64,000 nucleotides of DNA from Selaginella moellendorffii (Eukaryota; Plantae; Lycopodiophyta), in contig NW_003314295.1 in the NCBI RefSeq assembly GCF_000143415.4, positions 747,038 to 811,037 on the forward strand. Direction: 5' to 3'. Position numbers and translations under genes: made by a program. Shown here in pieces: positions 8,860 to 30,200 of this stretch; positions within the stretch are counted from its first letter, which is position 1, and each line of letters opens with the position of its first letter. Under the pieces are notes generated by a model. That model worked only from the letters and a program-made list of their open reading frames with translations, had not been told where the DNA came from and did not search any database.

Positions 8860-11146
8860 TTATATGGTGACGACTATCTGCTTCTCTTCCGGCTCTGGTA
8901 TATCGTCTCGCTGCTGCTGCTGGTCCTCCTTTGCATGATCTGATGCTCCATCTCCGAGGTTCTTGTTCTGGAGAGCGACGAAATCCTGCTTCAGTTTGCT
9001 AATCTGCTCCAGAGCAGCCTCCAGCTTGTTCTCAATCTTTTGTTTGTTCTTCATCAGCGATTCTATCATTTCTTGGTTGTTGACCTCGATCTCCGACGCG
9101 CAGGAATGCCTTGCTGATGTCGGCACTGGCTTGTTGACGAACTCCACAACTTTGAGGTCACTTGGAAGAAAAGGACGCTGTTGTTGCTGTGGTCGTTGCA
9201 TGGCTTCCTCCGTTTGTGGAGGCTGAAGTTTCCTGTAATAGCAGAGAAGTTATTGAGGCGCGAAAAGAAAGAGAGAAATGAAAAACTTACGACAGCTGAA
9301 GCTGGACGGGACGAGTTCCTTTCTGGGTGGCGAATCTTTCTTCGCGGGGCTTTACCGCTGATCAAGCGGCTCCAGAAGGTGCGTAGTCGAGATGCCTTTT
9401 CAATCTTGAAACCTGTTTGGAGCTGGAAGTATAGTGGCAAGTAAACACCAGAAAGTTTCAAGACTTGAAGTTACCAGATTGCTGTGCCGAAAGACGTGTC
9501 CACCATAAGTTATTAGAAAGTTCAGTCCACGATGCTAAGCGCTCACAATGCTAATTCCCTGACAATCCAGAGTCAAGCTTGCAAAACCAGAAAACATATC
9601 GTACATCGTTTGCCAAGGGCGAGTTTGGTGAAACAGTCATAATAACAGCCCACGTTTGGGTCGGGAGAGTTCCAATAATTTCTGCAAAGCCCAAAGTTTA
9701 GATGCGATTTGCCAAGAAAAATCTGCATTTACCTTTATCGCTGTATTCTCCTCCTACAATGTACCACCTGTGGCCAACAATTACACTCGCATGACCAGCA
9801 CGAGGAACGACGTTGCCTCTCGGCTTCGTTGCAACCCATTCCATCTATAGATTTTGAAGATCAGAGCATGAAGAAACAGGACAACGGACTTACCGCACGT
9901 AGATCTAGCTAAGATAAGAAGTTCTTGATTTCCACCAAAAATCCACAGGTAACGCCCGCCGTAGCATGCAGCAGTATGACATTTCCTTGGACAAGGCTTT
10001 GAGCCACTGCATCAAGGAAACACAAGGGTCAGTGAGTGGTAGGAAGAGACAATGGAAAGCTGTACATGGTGCTGCAAGGAAGCCATGAAAACGTTTTGAG
10101 ATCCAGATTGAATATCATTTCTCAGCTGGCCTCTGGCATCCTCGCCACCAAACATAATCGGCATGGAACCAACATGAACGATGCTGTGGCCGATGCGAGC
10201 CATCTGCAAGGTGATAAACCGTTAGTCATTCTGGACAAATGTTAAGGAGCACATACCGGTATTTCTCCACCCACGTCAAGCTTTCGTGTTTCCAGTTCAA
10301 AAGCAATGACTGCAGGTTTGAGCGCTTGGTTAAATTGTTTATAGAACTACTGCTAGCAAACCTTCCAAGATCTTCTTCATCGGTTCTAATGGCCTCCAAG
10401 AACAAGCAGCTTCTTCTCCCAGAACACCTGCAAAAAATGCTCGTAAAAACAAAAGGTATAGTTCGAGACTGACACTACCAAGCTATGGCCGGCACAATGA
10501 GGGCCAGGATACCCCAGTTCCGGAACCCATAAACTCCATTCCCTCCATTCACCCGTAACCGTATTTAGTTCCTGTTAAGTAGAGGATTAATTTGAGCAAT
10601 AGAAACACTTGATTGGTACCTGGACGTCGTTTAACAAGCTCCAGAAAATGCCACCCACAACGAACATTCTTCGACCTACCATTGCCGCATGCTACAGAAA
10701 ATACGCCAGAAAAACTAAGCAACAGCACAAGATAGAAAAATCACACCTTGGAACGACATATCGGTGACTGTCCTGTTACTTGAAGTTTGTACCATGAGTG
10801 CTCATATTTAATCATGTCAAGGGACTTGATAAACAGGTTTTCTTCGTCTAAGGCAGCATGGTGCTTCCGGTACTAGTAATTTGTAAGATCAGTATCAACT
10901 AAAAGAGGAAAAAAAAAATGAAAAGAAATGAGAGAGCACCTTATAGGTAAACCATGGTACGCAGTGCACTTGACTGTAGTGCTTGCATCGGCAGCTGCAG
11001 TGAGACGGAGTTGGACTGGCACCGCTGCTACCAGTGACAAACTGGCAAACACTATCATCACTTCTCCGTGGCAAGGCCCAAGGAGCTTCCGGGATGAGAT
11101 CCAAGGGACTGCCCGGTGCACCATAATACAGATCAGTGTTGCTCAT
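8860..11146 (-). pseudogene. Kelch-repeat protein (ACBP4/5-like kelch domain plus C-terminal coiled coil), pseudogene
   Basis: Kelch blades ARIGHSIVHVGSMPIMFGGED, PRAGHASVIVGHRWYIVGG and HAAMVGRRMFVVGG; coiled-coil ORF 8860-9201; in-frame stops and frameshifts. Confidence 0.75.
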
Positions 11147-11309
11147 AGCTGCGGGTGATGAATCTTGCAGCTTGATACTGCTTCAAATGAAAACCAATGC
11201 CAGGCACGTGATGTATTTGAATGGAGACAGTTTCTGACGACGTCCACAAGGCTGGAAAAATGAACGGCCGGTGAGCCTTTCAAAGCATTTCAATGTGCTG
11301 ATCCTAACC

Positions 11310-12460
11310 AATTTAGAAATATTACATATGTCAATCGAAAATTTTTAAAATAAAGAAAATATATAAAATATCAAAGAAAATTAACTGTTACTGTATAATA
11401 TTGCAAATTATTATATAATTTTTAAGATTTTTCCTTAATAAGAACAGATAAATACTTTGTAAAAGAAATTACTTTATAATCAAGAATGAAAAATATTTAT
11501 CATAAGATTTTTTATTTCTCACACAAGTGTTATATGTCTTAAGAAACAGAGAATATATTTAATTTATATAATTATTTAATAAAGCTACTTTTTAATAAAA
11601 GAAACTAGATACTCACAATACCTCTATAATATTTTCTCAAAAATATTATTTTAGTTTATTTTGCTATTTACAGTTTCAAAATTAAATCTTTGTTTCAAAA
11701 TTTTAAACATTTTAATATTCATGGTTATCAAAGGAAACATTACTTCTTCTTGAAATTATTTTTTATTTACCCTTTGTTCATCATATTGAAAAAGCTAATT
11801 ATTTTTGCAAATAAAATTATTTTCATGAAATAAAAAATAGCATTAATTATTTTTCTGTTTTATTTTGCAGATCAGCACTTCCAAGTGTGATATACTTGAA
11901 AATTAGTCATATATTAAAACATGGGACATTTGGTATCTTTTTCTTTTTATTAAGCTTTGTTATGCTTGCAATTTTTAATTTCAGAATTTCAAACTTCCAA
12001 GTATATTGAATTTTTTAAGACTTTGTATTTGAACTTTAGCAGGTAATACTTTCCCTTGTTTTTTGATAAACATAATTTATTTTTGCATAACTGATTACAA
12101 TTTTAGGATTTACCACAATTTTTGAAGTGTTGTCATTTTTTTAATGTTATACTCCTTTTTAAAACATTTTTTATAAATTTTTGATTTGTAAATTTTAAGA
12201 AAATTTTGTATTACATATAAAATATTTTACAAATATTGTCATCACCCTTGCTTTTATAGTTACTTATATATTTCTAGTCAATTTTAACTATATTTAATCA
12301 ACTCTTTTACTATCAATTTTACTAAATTTTATATATAGATTTTATATAAAGTTTTTCTAAAGTAATTAGATTTTTAAATTTTAGTTTGAAAGAGTTTTTA
12401 GTTTGTGTTTTTAAAGTAAATTATTTTACTTGAACATTTGTTTAATCTTAAATATTCAAT
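11310..12460. other. Very AT-rich non-coding block
   Basis: No ORFs, poly-A/T rich, abrupt compositional contrast with both flanks. Confidence 0.7.
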
Positions 12461-12465
12461 TAAGA

Positions 12466-14135
12466 TTAACCACTCACATCTTGCTCAAAATTGAGTTTTG
12501 CTAAATCCACCCAAGTCTGCCAAGCACTAGGCTCAAACAAAACAAAATGGATCTACAAAAACGAAAACAGGAAAGTTCAAGCAAGATAGAAGGAGAACAA
12601 AATAAAGGATCACTCACCTCTGAAAAGCCCTCAGAATTTTCTTTGATGGTATTCAACGAGATCTTGGCAGCGTCGTCCAATGGATATCTGCATAACATTC
12701 ATTCAATCATCGAGGATTTAAACAAGGAAGCTTTTACCCGTAGATCCCACAGGAGATGGCCGGGAATGCGATGTACTTGACGCCCTTCTCCCTTGCAAGC
12801 TTTATCGAGTTCCTGAGCAAAAAAAACAGCAAAGCTTCATTATTCTTTTTTCTTTTCTCACTTACCTGTAAGCACTTGCAAGATAAGAAGCACAGTCATC
12901 TTTCACTTCCTTGTCATAAACCGGGCCTACGGTGTGGATAATCCGCCGCACAGGCAGCTGGAAGCCCCTGGAAAAAAACTTCAATCAAGAACAAAATGAA
13001 AAAGAGGAGTACCAAGAAGAAAACTTACGGTGTCTCCACGGCCATTCCAACGCCACAACGAACACCACCGTGGCTAGGCAAGTCCCTACAAGCACGGAGT
13101 AGCTCTCCTCCAGCGGCACGATGGATCGCTGCAAGAAAAGAAAGAAAGAACTGTCTTACGATCGATCAAACACTAAAGCTTTGGAAGAAAAGAAAAAAAG
13201 GAAAAGAAACCTTACGAACCTCCGTCCACTCCACCGCCTCCCATCATTAGCTCGTTGGCCGCATTCACGATGGCATCCGACTCTCCATCAATCTTCCACT
13301 TTGTGATATCCCCTCGCTGGAGGACGAGCTTGCATTCTCCGGAAGGGAGCTTGAACTTGAGCACCTGGGGAAGGAGATCCGGCTGCGAAGAGCTGGAGAA
13401 GGACCTCATGGCTGCCTTGGAGCGTTTAGTAGTCGCCACCCCTTCACCACTAGAGAGGAAGCCACGCTTCCCACATGAAAAGGAAAGCCCCATTGTGGAC
13501 GTGGACAAAGAGTTTTTAACTATTTGTTCTTCCTCGCTTTGGTAGCGTTTTCTCGCTAGCCGAGCAGTGAGAAGAAGATCTCCTCCTCCTCCTCCTCCTC
13601 CTCCTTCTTCATAGTTTTTCACCGATCTAGCCGTCCTTCGCTCGAGGAGGTGATGATCCACGCTGCCAAACTGGAGCTCCTCCAGGCTTGCTGGAAGAAG
13701 AGAGGGAGCAAGCTGCTGGATCATGCCATCTTGCTGAGATTTTTCCAGGCTTTTGGCCTGGATGGAGACCATTTCCATGGTGCCAAACTGGAAAACGTCA
13801 AAGCTGCCGAACTGGAACTTCCAGTTTGCGAGAAGAGGCTCGCCGCGCTTGTCCCGATCGTGCCGGGTGATTGCCGCTGCCACTCTGTGTGAATCCCGGC
13901 GCTGGAAAGAGCTGCTGTGGATGTGGATCCATTCTTGCGCGGCATTGATCGCGGCCACGTCCATTGGAGCAGCAAAATGCCTGGAAGATCGAAGAGGAGG
14001 ATTCTTTTCGCTCACCAGAGATCTTGAATCGCCGCGGCTGGAGATACTCCTGGAAATGTGGGGTGACCTCGAGAATCTAGCAACAGACCCCAAAAATAAT
14101 TTCCAGCGCCTCATCGTCTCATCCAACACCAACAT
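12466..14135 (-). CDS. MacroD-type macrodomain protein (ADP-ribosylhydrolase/Appr-1''-p processing family) with long N-terminal extension
   Basis: GDIT, DAIVNAANELMMGGGGVDG, IHTVGP, IAFPAISCGIYGYP and IHFVLF across GT-AG exons; stop at 12466; true start codon uncertain. Confidence 0.9.
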
Positions 14136-14183
14136 TCCCTCCCCTGTTCTAGGGCAAAAGGGTTAGGGTTCTTCGCGACAACG

Positions 14184-14901: not shown

Positions 14902-15270
14902 CTAGTGCCGCTCCACCACTGCTCCCAAGCTGTCCGTGACGAAGAACCTCAGCGTCCTGGGGTTGACAACCTCCAGCGTGCACAGATCCCCGATCCTCAT
15001 CTTGTAGTGCTTGACGATGGCCGACCAGCCCTGTGTGAGCATCCGCTTCCTCGCCACAATCCACCTCATTTCCCATTCTTTGCCGGCTCTGTCAACCAGC
15101 TTCACCATGCACGTCTGTGGCGGAAGCCACCGCAACGCAAACGCCTTCTCGATCGTCTGGAGGAACCAAAGTCAGGCAAAGGAGACGAAAAGAGCGACTC
15201 TTACCAGTCGAGAGTAGGGAGCGACGTTGGTCGTCCGGATGGGAATGGTTATCCTCGGCAGTGGAGTTGT

Positions 15271-15338
<68 letters not shown>

Positions 15339-16394
15339 TAGCAGCGGTAGCATCAGACGCAGCAGCAATTTGAGGCTTGGTCTCCAAAACGTTCACTGGA
15401 TTCTCCGGCTCGGCAACAGGAGTATCGGGTGCCGTGACAGCAGGATTCTCCACCACGCCAGTGTTATTCGTAACGTCCGGCTCCGGTGTAGCAGTGTTGG
15501 CAGCAGCAGCCGCCTCGATGGCGGAGACAGAAATAAAGACCTTGAAGTTCTTCCTCTCGGTTTTCAGCACCAGGTGTATTCCTGCTTCCTCCGCGGCACC
15601 TTGTCCTCCAGACATATCGATCTCTAGCGGGTCCTGTGCTGTTCCCAGTGACTGCCTTCGCTCTGCTCTTTCCGGGGTTACCATCTCGCTGGCTGGTGTT
15701 ACTGGTGTTGCTGCTGCTACCGGTGCAGCATGAACTTCATCATCCTCCAACCGAGCAGCTTTCCTTGGAGGACCATGCTGGAGCTCTTGCTCCTGGGCAG
15801 TCCTCTTCCTCAGTTCAAACTGATCTTCCGACTCTGGAGCTGGAGAAGTGGCAGTCGCAGGTGCAGTAGCAGCAGCAGCTGCAGCAGTCGGATCTTCCAC
15901 AAACTTTGAGGCTACAGTTTCTTCTTCCACGCCCGGCATCACGGTCTCTGCAACAGCCGACTCCACCTCCGGCTGCTCCTGCTTCACCTTGACATTCCGC
16001 CTGGCATCCGAGTCCTCCCCCGCCCGCGTTATCTTCACCGAGAAGAGGCTGGGACTGAGCATGGTGAACATCACCTGGTCGTCGATCTCGAGCTCGTTGT
16101 CCCTCGCAAAAGCAGTCCACCCGGGCCCCCGAAACGCATACGTGGAGCTCTTCAGCACCGCAACCTTCACCACCCATTTCTTGTGGGAGTTGATCTTGAG
16201 CACCGCTTCGCTGGCCAGCTTGCCGCGCTGCTCGTCGTGAAACTCCTTTGGAATAGGCTGTGGCGCGGCATCACAAGTTAGTTCGTCTTCTAGAGATCGA
16301 GAGAGCTTACCAGGCATCCCGGGTAGTCCTTTGATACCGCTACTCGAGTGATCGTCTTTGTGAAACACGGCAGTGTGCCGATCTTGGAACCCAT
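14902..16394 (-). CDS. B3 DNA-binding domain protein (REM-like, two B3 domains)
   Basis: B3-1 IPKEF...KWVV...GWTAFARDNELEIDDQVMF; B3-2 VKLVDRAGKEWEMRW...LTQGWSAIVKHYKMRIGDLCTL; Ala/Pro/Thr-rich linker. Confidence 0.85.
15268..15346. repeat. (GCA/GCT)n microsatellite encoding poly-Ala in the B3 gene
   Basis: Long agc run with occasional agt interruptions. Confidence 0.95.
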
Positions 16395-17845: not shown

Positions 17846-20182
17846 ATTGTAAGAGAGGCAAGTCCGTGAATAGCTAGAAAAATAAAAAAAAGTAGAAAGA
17901 GAACCTCCTTAGATCAAACTCTTGCATCCTCCTCAAGGCGATATCTTATGTTCGTTTCGTGGCTGCCAAGTGGAGAGCCTGTACGGCACATCAAACCATA
18001 TCCACTACCAAGTTTTTAGGTTCAGACATTGAACGCTAATGTCAAATGTTTGAAAGTTGTTTTTCATTTTCTTTCTTCATTTGATCTAGATCTTGGGTTA
18101 GTAGATCTTATCATACCTTACAGCTTGATCACGAAGTTGCAAAATTTAACTTTTGGATGCAATCAATTTTATTTTAGTGCCATATGCAACATTAGTGCAA
18201 GCTCACAAATTCATCTTTTCTTGATAGATCTTAACTGAATTGCTCTGCTGAGTGTTTGCATGAGAACTTTAGAGTGATGTTTTGCAATTTCCTCCCACAT
18301 TAGTTTATTTTGAGTGGGGAAGAGGTTTCTAGAGCTTCTTGCAGATAAACCTAAAGAAAAGTTAAATAAGTGATGGCCACATTTGTCTGCTCTCAGCAGA
18401 GACGAACAACATGTGTTTTCTGAAACAAGTGAGTGTTTAATAAACTCACTCCCAAAATACAATTGCTTACTCGTGGACGAACGCTATGGATTTGTACACT
18501 ACAGAGCAGAAAAGAAATTTAACATAAGATGAAACGACAGTGTAGATCAGAGCTAACAACCAGTCCCGCAACATAGTCTTCCACACAGCAAACATAGCCC
18601 GGTATTGTTTTGCAACGCAATCAGTAGTATCTACATAGAAAAAAGGAAACATAGGACGGTCTTATGGAACAAGTAAAGAAAGACTTTGAAGGACAGTAGA
18701 GTCATCAGTTGGAAAGCCACTGCTCCCACAGCTCTTAGAACAATGGAGAAGCTTTGTGAGCCTGTTTCACGCTGAAGACTGTGGCACCACTTGAAAACGA
18801 CTGCCACCTCCAAGGTATCATGAAATCTAGAATGCAAATGCCCTTACTATATGCATGTCCTTTTCCTCTCCCCTCACAAAGTGCCACATGGCATGCTAGG
18901 CACCATCCAATAAAAATGTCCCATTAACAAACCGAACCAATGGAAATTCAAGTGTTGAAGCCACAGAACCCTTTGTTATCACATCTGGATCAGAGTTTAG
19001 AGAATGTAGCAGAATAGAATTGAAGAGATAGTCAATGAGGTAAAATATTACTCTAAACATATTGGATTATACAGCTAGAAGGTGCAGTGTTGTACTGAGT
19101 GGTTGCTGGATTTGCCATTGCAAACAAATCAATTAAGCTTAACTTAATTTTTTTATCTCACAGTTTTCACTTTTGCCCTAAAGAATTGGAGTCAGAAGTT
19201 TATTTAGTATTTGTGTTGAGATCAGTGTATTTCTCTGGGAAGATACCCTCCACTCCCGTAGAACAACCATTACAGTAGTGCATATGGTAGCACCCACTGT
19301 AGTAGGTGCTACTGCCCACCATATATTTGCAAAATACAATGTTCTCTCCTTTTGCTCTATGAAAAGTAGATTAGTATATAGATTTTTTTAGAGAAAAACC
19401 TTGAGTTTTACCTCTTTTGAAGTGATTAATTAGTTTTTTTATGTCACAAGGCTTTTTAATTTGAATGATTGAGCTGATTGTGATCTTGACTATAGATGAA
19501 TATGGAATGAGGGCAACTTGTGAACATATAATATTATATGAGGTGGAAATAGGCCGATTTGATGCTAAGTGAAGTTATTTTTGTATATTAAAAAGAAGCT
19601 CATCTTTTATTATATGTAGGATATCATATTTCAAATTGAAGACAATAGTTTAATAGTTTTGCACTCTATTAAGATTATATTGAGTTGCAATTATTAGGTT
19701 GGTTGGTATTGTTATTTTGAGTGATAATGAATTTTTCTTAAACTTTGATTTTTTATGTCATTTTTTTTATTAGTGTTTTAGCTTCACATTAGATCTTGAA
19801 AATGGTTGAATAAGAGTGTTAATGCAATATAGATATCTGAAGATATAGTCGTCAAGATCAAGCCTTGGATGTTCATTTTATATTTTTATGGATGTTAGTG
19901 TTAAATTTGGAGATATGGCCATAATATTCAATGCTTAAGCATGCTATTGGGTCATAGAATTTGTATTACTTTTTTAAGGTATATTTTCCATTAAATGTAT
20001 TGATAGTGATTGTAACTTGTAGAAAACTTATAGTCTTTTCATGTGGTTTGGTTGTGATCCTCTCTTCTTTCACCTCTAAGTATTCTAGCATGTAAACTTG
20101 TTTTATATTTTCTGACCTTCTTGGGCTAAAGGTCCATTGATAACAAACAGTCACCTATATATCTTGAGATTTGTATAGATAC

Positions 20183-24217: not shown

Positions 24218-25436
24218 ATGCAGGCCGGGGTCGTGAAATGCAAGGTCTTCCCTCGCTTGGCGCAGGCGTCGCAGCTGTTGGAGAGGAATGCCGGCCTTGC
24301 ATCGCTCTACAAGCGAGCGTCGGGCATTCACACGACGCCGGCGGTGGAGGTAGCGCAGCCGACGAGGATCAGCTGCGCAATGGGTGGGCCGCGATCTATG
24401 GATAGGCCCCGCCGTCGCCCAAATTTCGATAGGCCGGGCGATACTCCCCCGACTCCGCCGCCGCCGCCGCCGCCAGAGCCTCTCAGCGGCCAGGTCAAGT
24501 ACAGGATCTCGGAGAACTGCGTCATGGCGATCTGGAAGGGCGACATTGCCTTGTGGCACGTCGATGGACAAAACGATTGCATTGTAAGGCTTTTTTTTTT
24601 CTTGTCTCGTTTTCGTGATGGTTCTCATGTCTTCTTTTGCTTTCCAGGTTGCTCCTGCGAACAAGCGATGCAATGCCGGATTTGGAGTCGATGGAGGTGA
24701 GTTTTGATCGGTTTTTCACCATTCTAAGGAAGCTCTTTTTTTTTTGTTGTTGTTCTAGCTATTCACCGTGGAGGAGGACCACGTCTTCTGGATGCTTGCC
24801 AGAAGCTCCCGGACGTAGCACCGCAAGGCATCAAATGCGAGGTCGGGAATGCTGTGATCACAAGGTGGGTGTAGCAAGGCCTTCTCTCGGGATTCGTTGT
24901 CTTATGTTTGTTTCGTGGTTGCCAGGGGATTCAATCTTCCTGCTTCTCGTGTGATTCACGCGATTGGTCCCGTCTACGAGGACAAGAACCGAGACGAGTC
25001 GGAGAGAAACCTCACCAATGCATACAAGTAAGACTCTTCTTCGATCAGAAAAAAGATGTTTTTAATCCCTCGGTGGTTATAGGAGTGCTATCGCGTTAGC
25101 TCTCAAGGAAAGCATCAGATTCATGGCGTTCCCTGCGCTCTCCTGTGAACTCTACGGGTAATTCTCGTCTTTCTAAGAGTTTCGAGTCCAAAAAATCGTC
25201 TTTTTTTCCAGATATCCTTACGACGAGGGAGCCGAAGTCGCATTGAACGCTGTGATAAAAAACCACCATGGATTGTCTGAGGTATATGAAGTTGGAGCTA
25301 GAACCTTTTTTCATTTTTCTTTTCTTTTTGTTCTCTCCAGGTCCATTTCATTATCAAGGCACAGGATGGATACGATTCCTGGATCGACGAGGCCAAGAGG
25401 ATGTTTAGACACCAGCCACAGGCACTGATGCAGTAG
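24218..25436 (+). CDS. Divergent MacroD-type macrodomain protein with putative plastid transit peptide (paralogue A)
   Basis: 7 exons: WKGDIALWHVDGQNDCI/VAPANKRCNAGFGVDG/AIHRGGGP.../VIHAIGPVY/MAFPALSCELYG/YP.../VHFII. Confidence 0.9.
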
Positions 25437-25825
25437 CAGCAAAGTTGCGAGAGCTCTATTCCTCTTAACACAGTCTGTAGCTAGAAACTACGTTAAATTT
25501 CAATCTGGAAAATGTGTGCCGATCCAACGGCTGTGGCTCGCTCTCTACTTTGTATCCATCGGATGCCATTGCCCAGTTGTTATGCGGTGGAATATCCACA
25601 TGAAGCAGGATATTTGAAAGAGAGCTCGAGGAAGCAAAGCGCTAGGGCAGCGCAAAGGCGCAGGCGCGCGAGGCGTTGGAGGTCAGTCATTTCTTCTGCG
25701 CTTGGATGTAGATTCGTTAGCGCGCTTTCATCCGGGCCAGAAATCTCCCAGGGTTTTGGGTTTTGGCTGGAAATCTCGCATTCTTCTCGCCCTGTTCCTT
25801 TCTAGGATTTCTTCCGGCACTCACA

Positions 25826-27115
25826 ATGGCCGCATTCTTGTGTGAAACAATCGCAGGGAAGATGGGGGCCGTGGGAGTGGTCCAAGCTTCGCAGTTCCTG
25901 GGCGCGGTGAAATCGCCGCCAGGTCTATCATCGCTAACGCAACACACCCAGCTCGTTGGGTCGAGCATTCGCAGGAAGAACAGCATCCACACGCAGCCAT
26001 CGCTTCACATCAATTGCGCCATGGGCGGGCCTCGCTCGGCGGGAATGGATCGGCCTCGCAGGAGACCAAACTTCGATCGTCCCAGTGGAGAGAAGCCCGT
26101 TCCTCCGCCGCCACCTCCGCCAGAGCCCCTCACTGGGGCGGTCAAGTATAAGCTCTCGGATACGTGCACCATGGTGATTTGGAAGGGCGACTTGGGACTG
26201 TGGTATATCGATGGACAAAACGATGCTGTGGTAAGCAAAGCTTTTGCGTCTAGGCTTTTCTTTTCTCGCTCTTTTTTCTCTCGAAGAAGTCTGAAGTTCA
26301 TGTTCGTTTTTTTTTCTTCTTCGTTTTCCTAGGTGGCTCCTGCGAACAAAAGATGCAATGCTGGATATGGTGTCGATGGAAGTAAGCTTTGATGCGCTTT
26401 AAAAGCCAGGAAAACATCGAGCTAAAAGTTTCTAAATGGCAGCTATCCATCGCTTTGCGGGTCCGAGGTTGCTTGATACTTGCCAGAAGTTACCCGACGT
26501 AGCACCTCAAGGGATCAAGTGCGAGGTCGGTCAGGCTGTGATCACAAGGTAAAGCTCTCTCTTTTTTATCTTAGAGTCTTGTCCACTTCATTCTTCCTTT
26601 CTTGCAGGGGTTTTAATCTCCAGGCGTCTCGTGTGATTCACGCTGTTGGTCCTGTTTACGAGGAGAAAAATCGAGACGAGTCCGAGAAAATGCTAACCAA
26701 GGCCTATGTGTAAGTGTCTACTATGATGATCTGGAGCTGGATTTTGGCATTCTCTAAACTTATTCGTTCTTTTTCTCAGTGCTGCTTTGAATCTGGCAAC
26801 TTCTAATGGCATTAAGTACATCGCATTTCCAGCTTTGTCTTGCGAGCTCTACGGGTATGTTTCGTAGAAAAACTAGAAAAGCTCAAGAGCTTGCATTCAC
26901 CAGGTATCCCCACGACGAGGGAGCTGAGGTTGGTCTTACGGCTTTGAGGAAGAACTGGGCTGGTTTTCAAGAGGTTTGTTTGATTCAATCTCTCGCATTT
27001 CTTTGTGGAATTCATGGTTTTGGATGGGTGTTTATAGATCCACTTTGTACTCAAGAATCCAGACGCTTATGAAGCGTGGCTAGACGAAGCAAAAAGAATG
27101 TGGAGGTTTGGCTAA
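25826..27115 (+). CDS. Divergent MacroD-type macrodomain protein with putative plastid transit peptide (paralogue B)
   Basis: Same 7-exon layout: WKGDLGLWYIDGQNDAV/VAPANKRCNAGYGVDG/.../VIHAVGPVY/IAFPALSCELYG/YPHDEGA/IHFVL. Confidence 0.9.
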
Positions 27116-27281: not shown

Positions 27282-30200
27282 ATGGGGATAGTGCTGTCGA
27301 TATGCTTCGAATGGTCAGCTCCGACGCTCGCCCCCGCCATGTCACTCAAGAGCGCCTCACTCCGGCGTCTTCGATCTCTCACGCCCTGGGCGATCCAGGT
27401 GATTCCAAGCATGGATCGGCAAAGGCGCGCTTCACAGATTCTAGGTTTTGCAGGATAGCAGGGAATTTCTGGTGAGAACGAAGAAATTTGCCATCAAGGA
27501 GCACATACAATGCAAGTTTGAGGGTCTCGGATCCTCGGAACGCTGCCGATGCGAAGATTTCAAGCAGCAAAAGGGGCAGCCAGCGATTGTGGGACTCCAT
27601 TCCAACTGGGTGACTGATAACATAGTAGCTACAGCTCGTCCATCGGATGCTCTCATCGGTGATTATTCCGTGCTAGAACAGGTAAGAACGTGAATCTCAG
27701 AGTAAATACTACTACTGTTGTTGCATGGACAGTTTGCAAAATGCGGTTTAGGTGCGATTTTCAATCTACAAGAGCCTGGCGAGCATGGAGATTGTGGACC
27801 AGGAATCAAAGTCGAGAGTGGATTTTCATACACACCAGAAAGTCTCATGAGAAACAAGAGTAACTCCCGTTATGCTCCAGTGTTTATTGTTTTTTTCTTC
27901 TTTTTTTCGGTGATTTGGCAGTCTTCTATTATAACTTTCCATGGAGGGACATGACTTGCCCGAGCGTCGAGTACACTCTGAACATTGTGGCAGTGATGGA
28001 TTTCCACATTTCTAAGGGAGCTAAGGTTTGTTTTGTGATCTTTGCGACCTTCGCGATCTTCAGAAGAGTTTTTCTATGCAGGTAGCTGTTCACTGTCATT
28101 CCGGACTTGGTAAGTTACTTTCATCTCATTGTAAGCAGCTTTCTTACGGTTCGTTTGCCACAGGACGCACTGGGCTTGTGATTGCTTGCTACTTGGTGTA
28201 CACGGGGCAAAGGAATGCTGTCGGAGTACGTTCTCTTGCAGTTAGATCTTCTTTTTACGAGCTAAATGCAGCTTTTTCCTGTGGCTCAGGCTGTGGAGCT
28301 GGTCCGCATGCATAGGTTTGCCACCATTTTCCCAAGCGATTCAACATATTTCTGTGCGTATTTAATCAAAAGTCTTAGCACACTGAGGCGTGAACTTACA
28401 TGCATTTTACAGACCAGGAGCTCTTCAAACAAAACAACAAGTGCTGCACGTGAAAGAGTTTGAGGACTTTCTATCAGGATTGAAGATTGTGTACGTGCAG
28501 CCTTGGCAAACTCTGGACAATGCCGGTACCAAAGGAACGCATCCGACGCTAGAAATTTTGATGGCAAGGCAAAGACAAATGCTTCATGGGGAAGAAAGTC
28601 GCCTTCTCCGATATACTCCAAAGGTAACAGAGGTCTAGCGCTTTTGTTGAGGACTTTCTTGGTACAGGTTTTGGTGTGTTTGGTTCGGGAGCTTTCAAGC
28701 CGTATTGTTTTGAGCAAAATCAACAAAGAAGCAGTCGCTTCTGCTCTTTTGCAAGGATTGGCACTTGAGATGACAACCGAAAAAGATCAAAACTTCATCT
28801 CAGACGTACAAACGGCGAAGGTATCAATAACTTTTTGTGGATGTATACTATTTGCCGTCCATAATCATGCAGAAAAAGCTAAACACGGGCAATTGGGAGG
28901 TACTTTGTAGCCTCGATGTTCGAATACTTGTGCAGCTGTTTCTAGATTGGTTTTACCTTCTTAAGGTCTGAGCAACTTCTTGTTCCTAGTAGCGCTCAGA
29001 CCAGCGTTTCTGGCAGGATCCCATAATCCCCGATGCAGCTTTAAGCAAAGCGTTAAGTCGTGGCGAGATTCGAGCTGCAAATTACGAGCTAAAGAAAGGT
29101 GGCAAGTGTTGCTTTTACACAATCAGGCTGTTGGCTTGCTGGATGCTTCAGGTACTATTTCCCTTTACTCCGTCGCAACTGCGCAACAACTATCTATGAC
29201 AGGTTGTTCCGGCAGAAAAAGACATGCGACGCAGATTGTTTAGCGGCTTGGCACATTTATTACTTCGACCGTCGAGTCTGGCCAGCGAGGGAAAAGTAGA
29301 GCTCTTGGACAAGATTGTAGATCCATTAAATCAGGAACATCAGAAGACGGTGGAGAGAAGCAGCACCTTTTCTCCATCGCTGCTGGAGGTAGAGTTCGGT
29401 TTGCTTTTGGAGGCGGCTGCGAAATACTGGTACAAAGTTTTGCTCCTGCAACGCAAGCTCGGCCCACTAAGCTCCATCAGTCCCAAGCTGAAAACAACCA
29501 AGAGCGACGACTTATGGGTGTACGACAAGGCTGGTATCGAGGCAGAGATTTGTAGCAATCCGGAGAGCGTCGAGGAGCTGCAAAGTGGCAACGAAGACGT
29601 CCAAGAATACATGTCAACTGTTTGTGTAGAAGATATCATCGACGAGGTCTCGTCTAGCGGACAGCTCGTCTTACCGAGCGCAACCTCCACTCCCATATCA
29701 TCGAGGCCGGAATCCAGCAATGTGTCAACTCCTCACAGAGGCTGACATGACTCCGGCAAAGCGAGCTAGCATCTCTTTTAGCGGGGGGGCTTAAAGCGAC
29801 TCACAGGCATCTCGGGGAGCTTGCGACACGTATGTGAAAGTGGCAGTGGTTACTGTGAAGGCATCGATCACAAAGCAAGGTTGTCACAGGTAGAGTGGAA
29901 CAGGAAAGTTGAGAAGCGATGGATCGTATATGTGAAAGTAAAGGTACTTCAAAAGCAGCCGAGTCAACAGGGGAGAAATAAAGGCGTAAACTTTTCATCG
30001 CTCTCGTGTCCAGCTCAGAGGAGAAATCGGTTTCTTCCTTGTTCTTCGACTCCTCAACTTCGCGGAACGAGCGCGTTGATAGAATCTTTGCACACCGGGG
30101 AGTCAAAAGAGGTAACGTGTTGCTTTTTCTAGTTCTCGTTTTGTCTTTGCCTCACCTATCTTATAATATAATCAGATCGATCGATCGATTGGTGGAGCAA

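What the first reader, a model, noticed from the sequence alone, without database searches (positions are those of the whole stretch)
24218..27115. Tandem, probably plastid-targeted macrodomains that naturally carry the 'ADP-ribose-binding-dead' G->E substitution
Seen: both intact 7-exon genes read FPALSCELYG where the neighbouring canonical gene reads FPAISCGIYG. Both read VAPANKRCNAG(F/Y)GVDG instead of VNAANxxMxGGGGVDG. The Glu uses different codons (GAA 25147-25149, GAG 26844-26846) while introns have diverged, which suggests it is maintained. Known: G->E at this loop-2 glycine (human MacroD1 G270E, MacroD2 G188E) is the standard engineered mutation that blocks the ADP-ribose pocket, and the NAAN and GGGG motifs support catalysis. 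Inference: a conserved pseudo-enzyme subfamily repurposed in plastids for another ligand, nucleic-acid binding or scaffolding.
Basis: partly seen in the sequence, partly recalled or inferred. Interest (0 to 1): 0.85.

Follow-up and report, generated by a model that had tools for sequence, protein, structure and literature searches.

The report
Selaginella macrodomain pair with blocked pocket
Two neighbouring, expressed and selectively maintained genes of the spikemoss Selaginella moellendorffii encode MacroD-type macrodomains that naturally carry a glutamate where laboratory mutants use glutamate to kill ADP-ribose binding. They belong to a spikemoss-only gene expansion, so this is a modest curiosity whose function is untested.

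Summary
Window 24218-25436 and 25826/25862-27115 (+) hold two tandem 7-exon genes of Selaginella moellendorffii: LOC9655751 (287 aa) and LOC9628792 (282 aa). Both read VAPANKRCNAG(F/Y)GVDG and FPALSCELYG. The Glu (GAA 25147-25149, GAG 26844-26846) aligns without gaps to Gly188 of human MACROD2.

The genes are real:
- Contigs from four studies show the introns removed.
- dN/dS between the copies is 0.15 in the macro domain, with saturated dS.
- The two assembled haplotypes differ by 10 synonymous and 1 non-synonymous change.
- The predicted fold is an intact MacroD fold.

The genes belong to a strongly supported clade of about seven loci that I found only in S. moellendorffii, so this is not a subfamily conserved across plants. 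Within that clade the loop-2 residue is G, E, R or N. The Glu is confined to this pair. "APAN" is not disabling in itself, because the key second Asn is kept and angiosperm proteins with intact GGGG and Gly read TPAN or APAN.

The adenine-site Asp, the ribose-site Asn, and Asp137/His141 are retained. Loss of canonical ADP-ribose binding is a reasonable inference but untested. Plastid targeting is plausible but could not be tested here.

The scan had also flagged this same locus as "three macrodomain genes in 15 kb" (s1-405453).

The parts
24218..25436 (+). Gene A (LOC9655751), 7 exons, 287 aa, MacroD-type macrodomain with an N-terminal extension
   Evidence: Spliced model equals P0001 at 100%. 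Pfam Macro scores 115 bits against a cut-off of 22. Spliced contigs seen in 4 studies.
25826..27115 (+). Gene B (LOC9628792), 7 exons. 294 aa from ATG 25826, or 282 aa from ATG 25862 (the RefSeq start)
   Evidence: Model from Met13 equals P0392. All six introns are removed in contigs of 4 studies.
25147..25149 (+). GAA codon, Glu230 of gene A, at the loop-2 glycine position (MACROD2 G188)
   Evidence: Gap-free HMMER alignment FPALSCELYGYP / FPCISTGIYGFP to 4iqy. No variant at this codon in 4 runs.
26844..26846 (+). GAG codon, the same Glu in gene B
24648..24695 (+). Loop 1 of gene A, VAPANKRCNAGFGVDG. The N92, G98, G100 and D102 equivalents are kept. G97 is Ala and G99 is Phe.
26333..26380 (+). 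Loop 1 of gene B, VAPANKRCNAGYGVDG
24218..24376 (+). Poorly conserved N-terminal presequence of gene A (residues 1-53). It ends in I-S-C before Ala54, which resembles a transit-peptide cleavage motif. Predicted disordered.
   Evidence: Alignment of A and B, composition, pLDDT 45-60. Targeting itself was not tested.
24380..24481 (+). Conserved basic and proline-rich segment MGGPRS..MDRPRRRPNFDRP..PPPPPPPEPL, shared by A and B and lying ahead of the macro domain
   Evidence: Related PPPPP(T/E)(E/P)L segments occur in the other clade members.
12466..14162 (-). Canonical paralogue, gene C (LOC9655748, 449 aa), with VNAANELMMGGGGVDG and FPAISCGIYG. It has the same intron positions within the macro domain.
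   Evidence: Sister to the divergent clade in the tree.

Best explanation
Genes A and B are an old tandem duplicate within a Selaginella-specific radiation of MacroD-derived macrodomain proteins. I call this the 'APxNKxxNxG' clade. It comprises about seven loci and appears to have arisen from the canonical plant MacroD gene that still lies 10 kb away.

Shown:
- Both genes are transcribed, correctly spliced, present on both haplotypes and under strong purifying selection.
- The domain is predicted to keep an intact MacroD fold.
- Glu occupies the loop-2 glycine whose backbone binds the ADP-ribose pyrophosphate in MACROD2.
- Other cleft positions changed across the clade. The equivalents of G97, G99 and L96 in loop 1 differ from the canonical residues, and the adenine-stacking F224 is Lys or Arg in all but one member.

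Inferred:
- Loop 1 was remodelled first in the clade ancestor.
- This relaxed the constraint on the loop-2 glycine, which was then replaced at least twice: by Glu in the A/B ancestor, and by Arg (then Asn) in another branch.
- The A/B proteins therefore most likely no longer bind or hydrolyse ADP-ribose in the canonical way.
- The equivalents of D78 (adenine), N92 (distal ribose), G98 and Y190 are invariant across the clade, and A/B also keep D102 and H106. So the cleft is probably still used, for an altered adenine-containing or nucleic-acid ligand. The proteins would then act as non-catalytic binding modules.
- They act in an organelle, probably the plastid, reached through the N-terminal presequence.
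For: Identity and gene models.

E230 aligns to G188 without gaps. G188E and G100E cause dramatic loss of ADPr affinity, and the G188 backbone hydrogen-bonds the pyrophosphate. MacroD1 G270E is used as a catalytic mutant.

Selection: dN/dS is 0.15 in the macro domain with dS about 1.6. The haplotypes show 10 synonymous and 1 non-synonymous difference, binomial P = 4e-6.

Expression: GT..AG joints matching ten of the twelve introns were seen in contigs of four studies. Both alleles are visible.

Fold: pLDDT is above 93 for residues 81-280. TM-score is 0.91 to the O. iheyensis MacroD and MACROD2 also matches.

Clade: monophyletic at 100/100, sister to gene C at 90/75, all rows from S. moellendorffii. 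Scores drop from 283 to 219 bits at the nearest non-Selaginella protein.

Pattern of kept and lost conserved columns: A keeps 46 of 62.

Plastid plausibility: the tomato orthologue of the canonical plant protein (At2g40600-type) was detected in the chloroplast stroma proteome. The presequence is low in acidic residues and rich in Ser, Thr and Ala.
Against: - No binding or activity data exist for these proteins.
- The engineered G-to-E result comes from human proteins with an unaltered loop 1, so a remodelled loop 1 could compensate.
- Most catalytic-site residues (N92, D102 and H106 equivalents) are retained in A/B, which also fits a still-active enzyme.
- G99E and F224A are reported as wild-type-like, so those changes alone prove nothing.
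- I could not inspect model coordinates to see where the Glu side chain points.
- Targeting is unverified. The RPRRRP cluster could be a nuclear signal, and human MacroD1 is mitochondrial (paper).
- "Selaginella-specific" depends on which lycophytes are represented in the databases.
Confidence: 0.6

Rival explanations
1. A and B are still working ADP-ribosyl hydrolases or ADP-ribose binders. The remodelled loop 1 and the Lys that replaces F224 compensate for the Glu, perhaps with a shifted substrate such as ADP-ribose-1''-phosphate, O-acetyl-ADP-ribose or ADP-ribosylated nucleic acid.
For: The equivalents of D78, N92, G98, G100, D102, H106 and Y190 are all kept in A and B. Strong purifying selection acts on the domain. 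The changes at G99 and F224 are tolerated in MACROD2.
Against: G188E on its own abolishes affinity in MACROD2, and G270E abolishes activity in MacroD1. Sister paralogues replace the same Gly with Arg or Asn, and some also lose D102 and H106. This looks like release from the canonical constraint.
Confidence: 0.2
2. The cleft is no longer used at all. The proteins are pure protein-protein scaffolds or regulators, and selection acts only on fold and surfaces.
For: The pocket is altered at several positions. Other clade members carry long proline-rich or Q/G/Y/S-rich low-complexity tails, which suit scaffolding.
Against: The cleft residues equivalent to D78, N92, G98 and Y190 are invariant across all clade members despite deep divergence. 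That is unexpected for an unused pocket.
Confidence: 0.15
3. The copies are decaying duplicates, or assembly or haplotype artefacts, with no function.
For: Canonical motifs are lost. An old chimeric annotation exists: P0002 joins A exons 1-4 to B exons 5-7.
Against: Both copies have intact ORFs and splice sites after dS of about 1.6. dN/dS is 0.15. The haplotypes differ by 10 synonymous and 1 non-synonymous change. Both genes are expressed and spliced in four studies. Both lie in tandem on each of two haplotype scaffolds.
Confidence: 0.02

Closest known systems
Human MACROD2 / MACROD1 (MacroD-type mono-ADP-ribosyl hydrolases) and their engineered G188E / G270E mutants
   Same: Same fold (Foldseek E about 1e-16) and 34% identity. 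The motifs align without gaps. The natural Glu sits exactly where the engineered mutation is made.
   Different: Here the Glu is natural and kept by selection. It comes with loop-1 changes (G97 to Ala, G99 to Phe or Tyr, L96 to Asn) and F224 to Lys. The protein has an N-terminal presequence and a proline-rich segment. Activity is unknown.
Canonical land-plant MacroD protein (At2g40600 / Solyc05g052260 type; gene C in this window)
   Same: This is the parent family. It has the same intron positions and the plant-specific PDVxPxGxxC insertion. It groups with the divergent clade in the tree. The tomato member was detected in chloroplast stroma.
   Different: Canonical members keep GGGG, Gly in loop 2 and Phe at the F224 position.
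Natural macrodomains that do not bind ADP-ribose (macroH2A1.2 and macroH2A2, GDAP2, coronavirus SUD macrodomains). This comparison rests on my own knowledge and was not tested here.
   Same: The macro fold is kept and the pocket is altered, so the domain is reused as a non-catalytic module. Some of these bind nucleic acid.
   Different: They belong to different subfamilies and have different pocket changes. None is a MacroD-type protein with Glu at the loop-2 glycine, as far as I know.

Membership tests
Macro domain superfamily (Pfam PF01661) | Significant profile match over the whole domain | tested here: met
   115.2 bits against a cut-off of 22, covering profile positions 1-118 of 118
Macro domain superfamily (Pfam PF01661) | Three-layer alpha/beta/alpha macro fold | tested here: met
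   AF2 pLDDT above 93 for residues 81-280. TMt 0.91 and rmsd 2.1 A to 5fud / 5l9k.
MacroD-type hydrolases | Asn of the NAAN motif that contacts the distal ribose (MACROD2 N92) | tested here: met
   N127 is kept in A, in B and in every clade member. Only the first Asn is Ala.
MacroD-type hydrolases | Glycine-rich loop 1 (GGGG-V-D-G) | tested here: not met
   The loop reads NAG(F/Y)GVDG. G97 is Ala and G99 is Phe or Tyr. The G98, G100 and D102 equivalents are kept.
MacroD-type hydrolases | Loop-2 glycine that binds the pyrophosphate (G188 in MACROD2, G270 in MacroD1) | tested here: not met
   Glu in both genes. Gly in 359 of 372 sampled domains.
MacroD-type hydrolases | ADP-ribose binding and ester hydrolysis | not testable with these tools
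   This needs ITC or DSF and de-MARylation assays.
Plastid-targeted proteins | Cleavable N-terminal transit peptide and plastid localisation | tested here: inconclusive
   An N-terminal extension of about 53 aa is poorly conserved, disordered and low in acidic residues. It ends in I-x-C before Ala. No targeting predictor or localisation data were available. The tomato canonical orthologue is stromal.
   None was found among the 150 best hits (E up to about 5e-25) of the phmmer scan of 1.84 billion representatives. None was found in the profile search either, where scores drop from 283 to 219 bits at the nearest outsider. All clade members are S. moellendorffii.

The most novel reading that the evidence does not exclude
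The spikemoss lineage evolved a family of organellar macrodomain 'readers' with new ligand specificities. Opposite charges (Glu in A/B, Arg in the sister branch) would be installed at the former pyrophosphate site to recognise different nucleotide or RNA-linked ligands. This would be a natural example of a hydrolase pocket re-tuned into a set of binding modules.
Probability: 0.2. Interest if true: 0.65.

Novelty: new variant of a known kind. Interest (0 to 1): 0.4.

Why it matters
Macrodomain research uses the G-to-E change as its standard dead control. Here the same change is natural, selectively maintained and expressed, next to a canonical paralogue. That offers a ready comparison for asking what a macro fold does once the pyrophosphate site is closed.

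It also adds data on plant macrodomains, which a review of the field notes are uncharacterised. The reach is limited, because the clade was seen in only one lycophyte species and nothing about its function has been tested.

Tried and rejected
- Pseudogene or neutral decay: rejected by dN/dS, the haplotype comparison and the expression evidence.
- Assembly or haplotype artefact: rejected. Both genes lie in tandem on scaffolds GL377599.1 and GL377591.1.
- Gene conversion as the reason for the shared Glu: unlikely. Exon 5 is only 66% identical at DNA level and the Glu codons differ.
- "APAN" as a disabling signature: rejected. TPAN and APAN occur in angiosperm proteins with intact GGGG and Gly.
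- Orthologue searches outside S. moellendorffii found none.
- Literature searches for Selaginella or chloroplast macrodomain studies found nothing specific.
- I could not inspect the AF2 coordinates, so there is no pocket geometry.
- No targeting predictor was available.
- Two intron joints of gene A (24697-24758 and 25282-25340) could not be read, because the reads tool skipped T-rich repeats there.

Full report
**What is there**

The window is Selaginella moellendorffii scaffold GL377599.1.

I rebuilt two tandem, same-strand, 7-exon genes.
- Gene A spans 24218-25436 and encodes 287 aa, identical to LOC9655751 (P0001).
- Gene B spans 25826-27115. From its second ATG at 25862 it is identical to LOC9628792 (P0392, 282 aa).

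All introns are GT..AG, 49-102 nt long, with identical phases in the two genes. Within the macro domain the intron positions match those of the canonical paralogue, gene C, on the minus strand (12466-14162, LOC9655748).

Both genes read VAPANKRCNAG(F/Y)GVDG and FPALSCELYG. The Glu codons are GAA 25147-25149 and GAG 26844-26846. Gene C reads VNAANELMMGGGGVDG and FPAISCGIYG.

**Does the Glu sit at G188/G270?**

Yes. HMMER aligns FPALSCELYGYP to FPCISTGIYGFP of MACROD2 (4iqy) with no gaps nearby.

The paper read names G188, I189 and Y190, and G100 and D102. These fix the numbering on the chain sequence printed. G188 is the Gly of T-G-I-Y.

For MacroD1 (2x47) the aligned ranges put Glu230 at chain position 180. 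That is residue 270 if the 235-residue construct starts at residue 91. The construct start is from my memory, though the length fits.

The same paper reports the following:
- G188E and G100E lose ADP-ribose affinity dramatically.
- The G188 backbone hydrogen-bonds the pyrophosphate.
- G99E and F224A behave like wild type.

MacroD1 G270E is used as the catalytic-dead control.

In A/B the loop-1 changes fall on G97 (Ala), G99 (Phe or Tyr) and L96 (Asn). The equivalents of N92, G98, G100, D102 and H106 are kept. The "APAN" change affects only the first Asn. That position is also Thr or Ala in angiosperm proteins that are otherwise canonical. The one clearly disabling change, by analogy, is the Glu.

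**Are the genes alive?**

Contigs from four independent studies hold about 45-48% of the sampled words of the locus. That is roughly what an exon-only copy would hold. They carry GT..AG joints matching ten of the twelve introns. The other two lie in T-rich repeats that the tool skipped. Spliced forms show transcription, and allelic variants of both haplotypes appear in the contigs.

A and B are 65% identical in protein. Nei-Gojobori dN/dS is 0.19 overall and 0.15 in the macro domain, with dS about 1.6, which is saturated. The duplication is therefore old and both copies have been constrained.

The second haplotype (GL377591.1) carries the same tandem pair. Across 1713 coding bases the haplotypes differ by 10 synonymous changes and 1 non-synonymous change (A42T in the presequence). 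Introns differ at 3.4% of positions. If differences fell in proportion to the share of non-synonymous sites, P would be 4e-6.

AlphaFold2 gives pLDDT above 93 for residues 81-280 and a disordered N-terminus. Foldseek finds MacroD-type structures first, with TM-score 0.91 to the Oceanobacillus MacroD, and MACROD2 also matches.

**How widely is it conserved?**

Three searches were run: an exhaustive phmmer scan of 1.84 billion representatives and two word-indexed searches. They found proteins with the AP(A/G)NK..N(A/T)G loop only in S. moellendorffii. The members and their loop-2 residues are:

| Protein | Loop-2 residue |
|---|---|
| Genes A and B | Glu |
| SELMODRAFT_113024 | Gly |
| LOC9642578 | Gly |
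| LOC9644583 | Arg |
| SELMODRAFT_132911 / "AGP31-like" P0393 | Arg |
| LOC9649174 / LOC9637899 | Arg |
| SELMODRAFT_444786 | Asn |

Profile scores fall from 283 bits for the weakest member listed in the profile search to 219 bits for Physcomitrium.

In a maximum-likelihood tree the nine rows form one clade at 100/100. The clade is sister, with weaker support (90/75), to Selaginella gene C and sits inside the land-plant MacroD group. This is a lineage-specific radiation, not a pan-plant subfamily, and the Glu is private to the A/B pair.

Changes shared across the clade are the first Asn to Ala, L96 to Asn, G97 to Ala or Thr, and G99 to a variable residue; F224 is Lys or Arg in all but one member. 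Some members additionally lose D102 and H106. The equivalents of D78, N92, G98 and Y190 are invariant.

**Reading**

The most economical history has three steps:
1. Loop 1 was remodelled in the clade ancestor.
2. The constraint on the loop-2 glycine was relaxed.
3. The glycine was replaced at least twice, by Glu and by Arg (then Asn).

By analogy with G188E, canonical ADP-ribose binding and hydrolysis in A/B is probably lost. The invariant adenine-site and ribose-site residues, together with strong purifying selection, argue that the cleft still does something. I therefore favour an altered-ligand, non-catalytic binding module (0.6). The alternatives are a still-active hydrolase (0.2), a cleft-independent scaffold (0.15) and a dead gene (0.02).

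**Localisation**

The first 53 or so residues are poorly conserved between A and B, low in acidic residues and disordered. They end in I-x-C before Ala, which resembles the stromal processing motif (my own knowledge).

The tomato orthologue of the canonical plant protein was found in the stromal proteome.

Against this, the conserved RPRRRP cluster could be a nuclear signal, and no predictor was available. Plastid targeting stays plausible but untested.

**Novelty**

Macrodomains that have lost ADP-ribose binding are known. A MacroD-type protein that naturally carries, and maintains, the textbook dead substitution, within a spikemoss-only radiation, is a new variant of that kind. I found no paper on it.

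Noticed in passing
window 25679-25855: In two of the four runs a GT..AG splice joins gene A's 3' UTR (25679) to gene B at 25855. This removes B's first ATG (25826) and leaves ATG 25862. In those two runs the contigs carrying this splice join A's last exon and 3' UTR to B; in one run a single contig spans both genes. The NCBI gene range of LOC9655751 covers both genes. This suggests read-through or conjoined transcripts, or an upstream start for B.
   Followed up: partly
window 24218-27115 (protein P0002, SELMODRAFT_107247): The older gene model is a chimera of gene A exons 1-4 and gene B exons 5-7. It is an annotation artefact that hides gene B in searches.
   Followed up: yes
other S. moellendorffii scaffolds (proteins P0003, P0394, P0393; P0114): A second pair of divergent macrodomain genes lies on one 1.5 Mb scaffold, probably adjacent to judge from consecutive accessions: the G-type 113024 and the R-type 113089 / 'AGP31-like'. 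One clade member (444786, 762 aa) has a roughly 400-residue C-terminal Q/G/Y/S/P-rich low-complexity tail. Others have long proline-rich N-terminal linkers.
   Followed up: partly
window 27282-28500 (+): The next gene downstream encodes a dual-specificity phosphatase-like protein (HCHSGLGRTG motif; Pfam DSPc in the called gene). No evident link to the macrodomain genes.
   Followed up: no
window 13215-14162 (-): Gene C has an N-terminal extension of about 257 residues with repeated (F/L)QFG(S/T) motifs and a Gly run ahead of its canonical macro domain. The scan flagged this separately as s1-405381.
   Followed up: no
window 15250-15390: A long trinucleotide repeat that reads as poly-Leu, poly-Cys or poly-Ala in the three minus-strand frames.
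   Followed up: no
window 10000-12400 and 18000-20000: AT-rich stretches (GC 0.35-0.36, against about 0.49 elsewhere). Possibly repeats or transposon remnants.
   Followed up: no
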